Origin: Octopus bimaculoides
Lineage: Eukaryota
DNA: 63,774 nucleotides
Assembly (NCBI RefSeq): GCF_001194135.2
Contig: NC_068995.1
Span: forward strand, 9,161,881-9,225,654
Direction of reading: 5' to 3'
A model generated the notes under the pieces. The model saw only the letters and a program-made list of their open reading frames with translations. It was not told the DNA's origin and made no database searches. Positions 443-987 of this stretch are shown here, one piece after another. The translations under genes were made by a program, and so were the position numbers. How positions within the stretch are numbered: the first letter of the stretch is position 1; the number at the start of each line of letters is the position of its first letter.

Positions 443-629
443 TATGGGACGATGCTACTGTAGTTTATAGCCCCAGGAAGAAATCTCCTCCAGCTGGCTA
501 ACGACACACTGTCTGTGCCCGATCAGTGTTTACGAAGGGAAATCATAGTTCCCATTTCTATCCTGACGTGATACACATAGACCTGGGTTTCTGAGTAGTA
601 ACCTTTCATCAGCGTGTGAGAATCACTGG
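443..629 (-). repeat. Direct repeat copy 1 (187 bp) carrying a hammerhead motif
   Basis: Ungapped alignment to 801-987 with 24 mismatches in 187 nt (~87%) by manual count. Confidence 0.95.
574..618 (-). ncRNA. Type I hammerhead ribozyme motif, copy 1
   Basis: Minus strand: cacacg-CUGAUGA-aaggttactactca-GAAAC-ccag-GUC-tatgtg; intact core boxes, GUC triplet, stem I cacacg/tatgtg; stem II weakened. Confidence 0.75.
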
Positions 630-800
630 CTAGGGATGAGACGTGATTCCGAACGCAAAATAATATATGCTTCTTCTAGTGACAAACCGTCGCTGATCTC
701 AAAAAAGGGGAAACAAGCAATAGCAAATCTCTGAGCGTGATGTAAATAGTAGAAGCTTGACATCATGAAATATATTTGCCACCTAAATGTGGTTGACCCA

Positions 801-987
801 TATGGGACGATGCTTCTGTAGTTTATAGCCCCAGGAAGTTAACTCTTCCAGCTGGCTAAAGACACACTGTCTGTGCCCGATCAGTATTTGCGAAGGGAAA
901 TCATCATTCCCATCTCTAGCCTGATGTCATGCACATGGGCCCGGGTTTCTGGGTAGTAACCCGTCATCAGCGTGTGACAATCGCCGG
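801..987 (-). repeat. Direct repeat copy 2 (187 bp) carrying a hammerhead motif
   Basis: Same alignment; period 358 bp. Confidence 0.95.
932..976 (-). ncRNA. Type I hammerhead ribozyme motif, copy 2
   Basis: Minus strand: cacacg-CUGAUGA-c-gggt-tact-accc-a-GAAAC-ccgg-GCC-catgtg; 4-bp stem II; triplet mutated GUC to GCC. Confidence 0.7.

What the first reader, a model, noticed from the sequence alone, without database searches (positions are those of the whole stretch)
443..987. Paired type I hammerhead ribozymes in 358-bp-spaced direct repeats: a candidate cephalopod retrozyme / circular-RNA unit
Seen: two 187-bp direct repeats (~87% identical, ungapped) flank a unique ~170-bp spacer. Each contains, on the minus strand, CUGAUGA-stem II-GAAAC-4 nt-G(U/C)C with a pairing stem I (cacacg with tatgtg or catgtg; copy 2 extends via tgtca/tgaca across a 4-nt bulge). 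The consensus stem III (acccgggt) is palindromic. Known: minimal type I HHRs with palindromic stem III loops, thought to act as dimers, occur in Penelope-like pseudo-LTRs, and tandem HHR units of a few hundred nt (non-LTR retrozymes) yield small circRNAs in some metazoans. Inference: cleavage after 938 and after 580 would release a 358-nt monomer. This locus is aged: copy 2 has GCC instead of GUC and copy 1 has a damaged stem II, so activity is more likely in younger copies elsewhere.
Basis: partly seen in the sequence, partly recalled or inferred. Interest (0 to 1): 0.85.

Follow-up and report, generated by a model that had tools for sequence, protein, structure and literature searches.

The report
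Decayed hammerhead-ribozyme repeat pair, retroelement relic
Two 190-bp direct repeats each carry a damaged hammerhead-ribozyme-like motif, most likely the dead remnant of a known kind of ribozyme-bearing mobile element; it is an ordinary relic, and nothing here shows that it makes circular RNA.

Summary
The repeats are real: 443-632 and 801-990, 86.8% identical, ungapped, 358 nt apart. An explicit type I descriptor matches copy 2 only, and only if U16.1 is not required; random windows give about 0.0075 relaxed hits each, so the motif is not chance. Neither copy is an intact ribozyme. Copy 1 has a broken helix II, and copy 2 has C at 16.1. Both share a C·A mismatch in helix I and an unpaired C/A·A between the core and helix II. 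No Rfam hammerhead hit appeared, even on 76-nt segments at E<=10. The hammerhead span is less conserved between copies (82%) than the rest (89%). The "unique" spacer is not unique: 80 nt of it is an inverted copy of the sequence 17 nt beyond repeat 2, spanning a junction into a neighbouring SINE. The 358-nt "monomer" is therefore probably a local chimera. The periodicity does not extend further, TRF finds nothing, the window holds no other copy and no PLE ORF, and the circular fold is unremarkable (z -1.6). No related sequence could be retrieved, so copy number, consensus, covariation and host taxon are untested. Verdict: plausible decayed member of the known PLE/retrozyme hammerhead class; low interest.

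The parts
443..632 (-). Direct repeat copy 1 (R1), 190 nt. It is the downstream copy when read on the ribozyme (minus) strand.
   Evidence: the repeat finder family D7; blastn and nhmmer find only these two copies in the window.
801..990 (-). Direct repeat copy 2 (R2), 190 nt, 86.8% identical to R1 (15 transitions, 10 transversions, 7 differences in CpG context).
566..622 (-). Hammerhead-like motif, copy 1. Helix I 618-613 pairs with 579-574 (5 of 6). Core CUGAUGA 612-606. Helix II 604-601/596-593 is reduced to 3 weak pairs (A604.C593 broken, G603.U594 wobble). GAAA 591-588. Helix III is ACC-CA-GGU, 588-581. C17 is at 580, with predicted cleavage between 580 and 579.
   Evidence: Sequence. It matches the box pattern but fails the descriptor on helix II. 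No Rfam hit. The hammerhead fold scores +9.6 kcal/mol against an MFE of -10.1.
924..980 (-). Hammerhead-like motif, copy 2. Helix I 976-971 pairs with 937-932 (5 of 6), plus a 3-bp outer extension 979-977/927-925 across the bulge 931-928. Core 970-964. Unpaired C963. Helix II is G962-U959 with A954-C951, loop UACU. Unpaired A950. GAAA 949-946. Helix III and loop are CCCGGG, 945-940. Position 16.1 is C939 (should be U). C17 is at 938, with predicted cleavage between 938 and 937.
   Evidence: Sequence. It is the only descriptor match in the window, and only when U16.1 is not required. No Rfam hammerhead hit.
633..800 (-). Spacer between the repeats, 168 nt, non-coding (longest ORF 47 aa).
673..752 (-). 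Segment X' inside the spacer. It is an inverted homolog (~75% identity) of 1007-1083.
   Evidence: blastn, MAFFT, Smith-Waterman against shuffles, nhmmer.
1007..1083 (+). Segment X: a ~45-55 nt non-SINE 'leader' plus the first ~30 nt of the adjacent composite SINE. It shares private variants with X' (AGATCAGCG; TGTC where other SINE copies have TGTG).
1052..1700 (+). Neighbouring composite tRNA-like SINE: head, internal (TATG)n, and a conserved 3' part, with a nested insertion of another SINE-like repeat at 1150-1380. This is context and not part of the hammerhead element.
   Evidence: Other copies lie at about 12997-13380, 40947-41130 and 41869-41914.

Best explanation
The locus is a dead relic of a hammerhead-bearing, non-coding retroelement module, of the class found in Penelope-like-element pseudo-LTRs and metazoan non-LTR retrozymes. 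In live family members (inferred from the published class), a transcript carrying at least two units lets two hammerheads pair through their palindromic helix III (ACCCGGGU). Each then cleaves after C17. The excised unit can be circularised by a host tRNA ligase and copied by a PLE reverse transcriptase into insertions longer than one unit.

At this locus one ~190-bp module is present twice. The spacer between the copies includes an inverted copy of the adjacent leader/SINE junction. The repeat-spacer-repeat is therefore best read as a locally generated, or insertion-associated, chimera and not as 1.5 copies of a genuine 358-nt family monomer. Both ribozymes have since decayed neutrally and are very unlikely to cleave.

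Shown: the repeats, the motif anatomy, the defects, the inverted homology, and the absence of other copies or ORFs in the window. Inferred: the origin from a hammerhead retroelement, the dimeric mechanism, and the local origin of the spacer.
For: Motif specificity: the descriptor gives 0 strict and 3 relaxed hits in 400 random windows, against one relaxed hit here, and that hit lies inside a duplicated module. The box pattern gives 0 of 100 shuffles.

Three of the four 'non-random' hallmarks listed for PLE hammerheads in PMC4209133 are present in copy 2: an unpaired nucleotide after A9, G10.1-C11.1, and a palindromic 15.2-16.2 plus loop 3. Helix sizes of 6 and 4 bp and the 2-nt palindromic loop 3 match the canonical metazoan type I description.

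The direction of CpG decay makes the copy 2 states ancestral at G10.1 and at the CG loop, so the ancestor was a better hammerhead. GC is 44-46% and there is no ORF longer than 47 aa.

Decay: the hammerhead span is 82% identical between copies against 89% for the rest.

Local chimera: X' and X are significantly homologous in inverted orientation and lie 17 nt beyond R2. X spans non-SINE sequence plus a SINE 5' end. The leader is absent from the three other SINE copies, and X' and X share private variants.

Hammerhead_1 loci and Penelope elements are reported in a cephalopod genome (PMC6962438).
Against: No Rfam hammerhead hit appeared at any threshold tried. An extra unpaired A between C11.1 and G12 is not a feature described for the class. 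The C2.2.A1.2 mismatch is shared by both copies. Predicted folding strongly prefers a competing hairpin. With only two non-independent sequences there is no covariation evidence. No second copy, PLE ORF or other hammerhead lies in 63.8 kb. X/X' divergence (~25%) is higher than R1/R2 divergence (13%), which fits a single local event poorly. The leader+SINE junction could be a family-level element that I cannot see without the genome.
Confidence: 0.5

Rival explanations
1. The locus is a genuine more-than-unit (1.53x) insertion of a 358-nt non-LTR retrozyme monomer that exists as a family. Cleavage at the two hammerheads once released a 358-nt RNA that was circularised. Segment X' is a native part of the monomer.
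For: The spacing of 358 nt is inside the published 150-450 bp range and close to the mussel units of 350-390 bp. The sharp-edged repeat-spacer-repeat is what rolling-circle or partial-tandem insertion gives (PMC4209133 discussion; PMC8557442). GC is low and there is no ORF.
Against: It requires the only other copy of X in the window to lie 17 nt from the element, inverted, and in register with a full SINE, all by coincidence. The periodicity does not extend and TRF finds nothing. The circular fold has z -1.57 with 16 of 200 shuffles as good. Both hammerheads are defective and there is no Rfam hit.
Confidence: 0.25
2. The motif is a chance hammerhead look-alike inside an ordinary local segmental duplication with no ribozyme ancestry.
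For: No Rfam hammerhead hit. Neither copy satisfies a strict descriptor. The hammerhead span is no better conserved than its surroundings. The MFE fold is a different hairpin, and the monomer z-scores are -0.15 and -1.67. The two copies are not independent observations.
Against: The relaxed descriptor has a false-positive rate of about 0.0075 per window. It does not count the full 6-nt palindrome, the bulge after A9, G10.1-C11.1, the 3-bp outer helix I, or the location in a retrozyme-sized repeat. Real hammerhead relics are expected to be far more frequent than that in genomes carrying PLEs (PMC4209133, PMC6962438).
Confidence: 0.13
3. The locus is an internally deleted Penelope-like element. 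The two repeats are its pseudo-LTRs, and 1007-1083 is the inverted 5'-truncated partial copy often found next to the upstream pLTR.
For: PLE insertions typically show pLTRs from partial tandems, an inverted truncated copy adjacent to the upstream pLTR, and hammerheads inside pLTRs (PMC8557442; PMC4209133). The inverted segment lies exactly on the upstream side of R2 on the ribozyme strand. Microsatellites flank the locus.
Against: No RT or GIY-YIG remnant between the repeats or anywhere in the window. The inverted segment runs in register into a complete SINE and does not continue into the rest of the unit and a repeat. Helix II of 4 bp and helix I of 6 bp are not the PLE min-HHR proportions of 6-8 and 4-5 bp.
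Confidence: 0.08
4. The locus is a Schistosoma Sm-alpha-like SINE: a Pol III-transcribed tRNA-derived retroposon that carries a hammerhead on the same strand.
For: X' is in sense orientation on the ribozyme strand and includes the box-A region of a tRNA-like SINE head. Sm-alpha and Sj-alpha are precedents (PMC2770079).
Against: Only about 30 nt of the SINE head is present. The homology stops before any box B. ARAGORN finds no tRNA-like gene. There is no A-rich or microsatellite tail at the 3' end of the element.
Confidence: 0.04

Closest known systems
Metazoan non-LTR retrozymes with type I hammerheads (Cervera & de la Pena 2020, PMC7229834), especially the amphibian type whose short helix III makes the ribozyme act as a dimer
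   Same: Type I topology; a 6-bp helix I and a 4-bp helix II; a very short palindromic helix III; a non-coding unit of a few hundred nt (358, against 150-450); GC below 50%.
   Different: Only 1.53 units and not a tandem array. Both ribozymes are defective. There is an extra unpaired C.A between the core and helix II. The spacer is partly a local inverted copy. The circular fold is not markedly self-paired. Copy number and circRNA are unknown.
Minimal and variant hammerheads in Penelope-like element pseudo-LTRs (Cervera & de la Pena 2014, PMC4209133; Craig et al. 2021, PMC8557442)
   Same: Unpaired nucleotide after A9; G10.1-C11.1; small palindromic helix III; located in direct repeats; an inverted partial segment next to the upstream repeat.
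   Different: No RT/GIY-YIG ORF. Helix II is 4 bp and not 6-8. Helix I is 6 bp and not 4-5. The inverted segment continues into a SINE and not into the element.
Sm-alpha / Sj-alpha SINE-like hammerhead retroposons of Schistosoma (Ferbeyre 1998, as cited in PMC2770079)
   Same: A short non-coding unit of ~330-360 nt combining tRNA-SINE-related sequence and a type I hammerhead on one strand.
   Different: Only a ~30-nt SINE 5' fragment is present here, with no box B. The hammerhead is not recognised by Rfam Hammerhead_1, whereas the schistosome hammerhead motif is in Rfam (PMC2770079).
Rfam Hammerhead_1 loci annotated in the giant squid genome (235 loci; PMC6962438)
   Same: They show that hammerhead motifs and Penelope elements occur in cephalopod genomes, if this window is from a cephalopod.
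   Different: Those loci pass the Rfam model and this one does not. No sequence comparison was possible.

Membership tests
Hammerhead ribozyme, type I | Conserved core boxes C3-U4-G5-A6-N7-G8-A9, G12-A13-A14, A15.1-U16.1 and H17 | tested here: inconclusive
   Copy 1 has all the boxes (CUGAUGA, GAAA, GUC). Copy 2 has C at 16.1 (GCC), which breaks A15.1-U16.1.
Hammerhead ribozyme, type I | Helix II closing directly on the core with a 10.1-11.1 pair, at least 4 bp | tested here: inconclusive
   Copy 2 has G962-C951 plus 3 more pairs, but unpaired C963 and A950 lie between helix II and the core. The 3'-side extra A is not a described feature. In copy 1 helix II is broken (A604.C593, G603.U594).
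Hammerhead ribozyme, type I | Helix I formed by the 5' and 3' flanks (open helix I) | tested here: met
   5 of 6 pairs in both copies, with a shared C2.2.A1.2 mismatch. Copy 2 has 3 more pairs beyond a 4-nt bulge.
Hammerhead ribozyme, type I | Recognition by curated covariance models (from my own knowledge of Rfam: Hammerhead_1, _3, _II, HH9, HH10) | tested here: not met
   No hammerhead hit at gathering score on the whole window. None at E<=10 on 350-1450. None at E<=10 on the two 76-nt segments searched alone.
Hammerhead ribozyme, type I | Compensatory base changes in the helices across family members | not testable with these tools
   Only two non-independent copies exist in the window. No related sequence was found in the metagenome, viral or prokaryote collections, or in the protein collection.
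Hammerhead ribozyme, type I | Site-specific self-cleavage | not testable with these tools
   This needs an in vitro transcription assay. Thermodynamic prediction favours a competing hairpin.
Metazoan non-LTR retrozyme | Head-to-tail tandem units of 150-450 bp (dimers to multimers), each with a type I hammerhead | tested here: inconclusive
   The spacing of 358 nt fits. However, there are only 1.53 units, no similarity continues beyond 443-990, TRF reports nothing, and both hammerheads are defective.
Metazoan non-LTR retrozyme | Non-coding, GC below 50%, no LTR/PBS/PPT | tested here: met
   GC is 43.6% for the monomer and 45.6% for 443-990. The longest ORF is 47 aa. PBS and PPT were not specifically searched.
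Metazoan non-LTR retrozyme | Stable, highly self-paired circular monomer | tested here: inconclusive
   The circular MFE is -93.1 against shuffles of -84.7 +/- 5.4, z -1.57, with 16 of 200 shuffles as good; 60% of bases are paired.
Metazoan non-LTR retrozyme | Multicopy family in the genome; expressed as circRNA | not testable with these tools
   No eukaryotic genome or transcriptome collection is available. There is a single locus in 63.8 kb.
Metazoan non-LTR retrozyme | The unit is a family-level monomer (same content in independent copies) | tested here: inconclusive
   80 nt of the spacer is an inverted copy of the adjacent leader/SINE junction and shares private variants with it, which suggests a local chimera. 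A genome-wide check was not possible.
Penelope-like element pLTR hammerhead | Located in direct repeats flanking an RT + GIY-YIG ORF | tested here: not met
   Only 168 nt of non-coding sequence lies between the repeats. No RT or GIY-YIG Pfam match was found in the 20 best stop-free segments of the window. 17% of the window is N.
Penelope-like element pLTR hammerhead | Unpaired nucleotide between A9 and 10.1; G10.1-C11.1; palindromic 15.2-16.2 and loop 3 | tested here: met
   Copy 2 has C963, G962-C951 and CCCGGG. Copy 1 retains only the first feature fully.
Penelope-like element pLTR hammerhead | Long helix II (6-8 bp) and short helix I (4-5 bp) | tested here: not met
   Helix II is 4 bp and helix I is 6 bp (criteria).
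Sm-alpha-like SINE with hammerhead | tRNA-derived Pol III module (A and B boxes) upstream of the hammerhead on the same strand | tested here: not met
   Only the first ~30 nt of a SINE head is present, with no box B-like homology. ARAGORN finds no tRNA-like gene.

The most novel reading that the evidence does not exclude
The two copies could be decayed members of a still-active, undescribed retrozyme family in this (putatively cephalopod) genome. Its hammerhead would be a structural variant, with a 1x1 C.A internal loop between the catalytic core and helix II and a dimer-dependent palindromic helix III, which would explain why Rfam models miss it. The family would produce small circRNAs of roughly 280-360 nt.
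Probability: 0.15. Interest if true: 0.45.

Novelty: new member of a known kind. Interest (0 to 1): 0.25.

Why it matters
If a live family exists, it would extend hammerhead retrozymes and their circRNAs to another molluscan lineage. It would also add a core-proximal helix II variant that current covariance models do not detect, which is useful for annotating ribozymes and small circRNAs. As it stands, the locus is one decayed relic of a class already described across metazoa, including a mollusc. Its main practical lesson is that motif spotting needs family-level evidence, and that the apparent 358-nt 'monomer' here is probably not a real unit.

Tried and rejected
(1) Rfam at gathering score on the whole window, then at E<=10 on 350-1450 and on each 76-nt motif alone. 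There were no hammerhead hits; the only hits were unrelated noise (SNORD52, DnaX, sul1). A permissive whole-window pass gave only microsatellite-driven miRNA-model noise among the 150 best hits shown.

(2) Retrieving other copies. Exact-pattern scans used the hammerhead core (variable positions as N) and a 22-nt invariant block, against the metagenome, viral and prokaryotic genome collections.

(3) The 'spurious ORF' approach, searching translations of the repeat, of the leader+SINE head and of a mariner fragment against the 5.8-billion-protein collection. All returned 0. Exact-product look-ups of three window ORFs also found nothing. The host taxon and copy number therefore remain unverified. 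From my own memory only, the SINE consensus resembles abundant octopus repeats.

(4) Supplements of the 2014 and 2020 papers. They hold no usable sequences and do not mention cephalopods.

(5) Target-site duplications. AATCTTTT (left, 14 nt from R1) against AATCCTTTTT (right) is too weak in AT-rich DNA to count.

(6) The energy of the trans-helix-III dimer. It cannot be evaluated because the structure is pseudoknotted in concatenated notation. Trans pairing is 6 of 8 for every copy combination.

(7) tRNA-like module in the spacer: rejected.

(8) A snoRNA reading of the UGAUGA at 895-911: rejected (17.7 bits against a gathering score of 45).

Full report
**Observation**

The window contains two ungapped direct repeats, 443-632 and 801-990. 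They are 190 nt long with 25 mismatches (86.8% identity) and lie 358 nt apart start to start. blastn (word size 7) and a profile nhmmer search find no further copy in the 63.8-kb window.

- Copy 1: CUGAUGA 612-606, GAAA 591-588, GUC 582-580.
- Copy 2: CUGAUGA 970-964, GAAA 949-946, GCC 940-938.

The pattern CTGATGA-N8-30-GAAAC-N2-12-GTC occurs once in the window and in none of 100 dinucleotide shuffles.

**Is it more than chance?**

I wrote an explicit type I descriptor with these requirements: helix I at least 5 of 6 pairs, CUGANGA, a 4-bp helix II with 0-1 unpaired nucleotide on each side, GAAA, a short paired helix III, and H17 not G. In the real window it matches only copy 2, and only if U16.1 is not required. 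Copy 1 fails on helix II. In 400 Markov-1 random windows it gave 0 strict and 3 relaxed hits, about 0.0075 per window.

The descriptor does not count several further features: the complete CCCGGG palindrome, the unpaired nucleotide after A9, G10.1-C11.1, the 3-bp outer extension of helix I beyond a 4-nt bulge, or the location in a retrozyme-sized repeat. I therefore regard hammerhead ancestry as likely (about 0.85) but not proven.

**Anatomy and defects**

- Helix I is CACACG pairing with (U/C)AUGUG, 5 of 6 pairs, with a C2.2.A1.2 mismatch shared by both copies.
- In copy 2 helix II is GGGU/ACCC with loop UACU. It is separated from the core by C963 on the 5' side, which is a described feature of PLE hammerheads. 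It is also separated by A950 on the 3' side, which is not described in the papers I read.
- In copy 1 helix II is degraded (A604.C593, G603.U594).
- Helix III is ACC-CA-GGU in copy 1 and ACC-CG-GGC in copy 2. Any combination of the two copies gives 6 of 8 trans pairs.
- Copy 2 lacks U16.1.
The real extension is 3 bp and exists only in copy 2.

Thermodynamic folding prefers a hairpin pairing CGGGUU with AACCCG, which buries the GAAA box. For helices I+II the hammerhead fold scores -3.5 against an MFE of -18.2 kcal/mol in copy 2, and +9.6 against -10.1 in copy 1. The z-scores of the motif segments are -0.15 and -1.67.

No hit to any Rfam hammerhead family appears, even when each 76-nt segment is searched alone at E<=10.

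Between the two copies the hammerhead span is less conserved (82%) than the rest of the repeat (89%), so there is no sign of constraint since the duplication. Seven of the 25 differences are in CpG context. Their direction makes the copy 2 state ancestral at G10.1 and at the CG loop, so the common ancestor was a better hammerhead than either copy.

**Architecture of the locus**

The similarity does not continue to the left of 443 or the right of 990, and TRF reports nothing. This is a bounded repeat-spacer-repeat of 1.53 units and not an array.

The spacer is not unique. Positions 752->673 align in inverted orientation with 1007->1083, which starts 17 nt beyond repeat 2 (score 63 against a shuffle maximum of 26; nhmmer E=7e-7). 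That segment consists of a ~45-55-nt 'leader' followed by the first ~30 nt of a composite tRNA-like SINE. The SINE continues to about 1700 and carries a nested insertion at 1150-1380.

Three other copies of this SINE in the window lack the leader. The spacer copy shares private variants with the adjacent SINE copy: AGATCAGCG, and TGTC where the others have TGTG. A SINE insertion junction is normally locus-specific. The simplest reading is that this part of the spacer was copied locally, at or after the time the second repeat arose. The 358-nt 'monomer' would then be a chimera and not a family unit.

One caveat is that X/X' divergence (~25%) exceeds R1/R2 divergence (13%). Another is that a family-level 'leader+SINE' element cannot be excluded without the genome.

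**Other retrozyme properties**

- GC is 43.6-45.6%, against 35.4% for the window.
- The longest ORF in the locus is 47 aa.
- The circularised 358-nt product folds to -93.1 kcal/mol, against -84.7 +/- 5.4 for shuffles (z -1.57, 16 of 200 shuffles as stable), with 60% of bases paired. This is not the striking self-pairing described for retrozyme circRNAs (PMC7229834).
- No convincing target-site duplication is visible.
- No RT or GIY-YIG remnant was found in the window: the ORF list, plus Pfam scans of the 20 best stop-free segments. 17% of the window is assembly gaps.

**Comparison with what is known**

Cervera & de la Pena 2014 (PMC4209133) describe canonical metazoan type I hammerheads with a 6-bp helix I, a 4-bp helix II and a 1-2-bp helix III capped by a small palindromic loop, acting as dimers in tandem repeats. 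They also describe PLE pLTR variants with a bulge after A9, G10.1-C11.1 and a palindromic helix III.

Cervera & de la Pena 2020 (PMC7229834) define metazoan non-LTR retrozymes as 150-450-bp tandem units with GC below 50%. The mussel units are 350-390 bp, and the retrozymes are expressed as circRNAs.

[quoted passage not shown] This locus fails that rule.

Craig et al. 2021 (PMC8557442) describe PLE insertions as partial tandems, often with an inverted truncated copy next to the upstream pLTR. That resembles the inverted segment here, but the segment runs in register into a full SINE and does not continue into the element.

Sm-alpha and Sj-alpha are SINE-like hammerhead retroposons (PMC2770079). 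The tRNA-like homology here is only a ~30-nt 5' fragment with no box B.

The giant squid genome paper reports 235 Hammerhead_1 loci and Penelope elements (PMC6962438). I found no paper reporting retrozymes in cephalopods.

**What could not be done**

None of the collections available to me holds this genome.
- Two exact-pattern scans in each of the metagenome, viral and prokaryote collections returned nothing.
- Three searches of translated frames in the protein collection returned nothing.
- Three exact-product look-ups returned nothing.

Copy number, family consensus, covariation, association with PLE ORFs, expression and the host taxon are therefore untested. 'Cephalopod' rests only on my recollection that the SINE consensus resembles abundant octopus repeats.

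**Verdict**

The motif is most likely a decayed hammerhead of the known PLE/retrozyme class, present in two copies of a 190-bp module. Both ribozymes are crippled, and the 358-nt unit is probably a local chimera.

My estimated probabilities:
- Hammerhead-retroelement relic with a locally generated arrangement: 0.50
- Genuine 1.5-unit retrozyme insertion: 0.25
- Chance look-alike: 0.13
- Internally deleted PLE: 0.08
- Sm-alpha-like SINE: 0.04

This is a new member of a known kind at best. Interest: 0.25.

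Noticed in passing
window 1052-1700; also about 12997-13380, 40947-41130 and 41869-41914: A composite SINE family. It has a tRNA-like head (consensus GGCGTGGCTGTGTGGTAAGAAGCTTGCTTCCCAACCACATGGTTCCGGGTTCAGTCCCACTGCGTGG), a body, an internal (TATG)n tract and a conserved 3' part (GTTTGTG...CTTGACAACYGATGYTGGTG...). 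ARAGORN does not call any of the heads as tRNA.
   Followed up: partly
window 1150-1380 (nested in the SINE above); also 27902-28034, 15551-15704, 11463-11615, 57521-57682, 35437-35606, 31373-31534, 46830-46993 and others: A second, very abundant SINE-like repeat (...CGACCCCGAAAGGATGAAAGGCAAAGTCGACCTCGGCAGAATTTGAACTCAGAAC...). It has at least 15 full or partial copies on both strands in 63.8 kb, at 70-90% identity.
   Followed up: partly
window 44869-45165 (+): A degenerate mariner/Mos1 transposase N-terminal fragment (Pfam HTH_48, E=1.1e-7, 32.3 bits against a cutoff of 24.1). A mariner-looking stretch at 56415-56621 (-) (…KFVPRVLSDEH…) gave no Pfam hit.
   Followed up: partly
whole window: 28 N runs of 10-970 nt (for example 3869-4675, 13658-14520, 61908-62877): 11,083 of 63,774 bases (17%) are N. 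Many gaps, including those checked here, are bordered by TA, CA/GT or similar microsatellites, so the scaffold is a short-read draft that broke at simple repeats. Elements could be hidden in the gaps.
   Followed up: no
window-wide, for example 47553-47636, 29961-30041, 58993-59063: 375 sub-threshold Rfam matches at E<=5. The 150 shown are nearly all to miRNA precursor models (mir-297, mir-3149, mir-466, mir-1277 and similar) and mostly lie on (TA)n/(CA)n tracts. They are well below gathering scores and are microsatellite artefacts, not miRNA genes.
   Followed up: no
window 243-356: A (GAA)n microsatellite followed by two copies of a 31-nt unit (AAGAAGAAGAAGAAGAAGTGAGAATTTACAA, 97% identical), about 90 nt from the edge of repeat 1. 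PLEs are reported to favour microsatellite targets, but no link was tested.
   Followed up: no
window 476-491 and 834-849 (minus strand): A small hairpin inside the repeat: GGAGGA-GAUU-UCUUCC in copy 1 and GGAAG-AGUUAA-CUUCC in copy 2. One difference (G to A) keeps pairing with U. A single one-sided change in two sequences is not evidence of structure.
   Followed up: no
window 941-963 and 583-605 (minus strand): ACCC occurs twice in the motif (helix II 3' strand and helix III 5' strand). GGGU(U) can therefore pair with either copy, and the non-hammerhead register is the predicted MFE in both repeat copies.
   Followed up: yes
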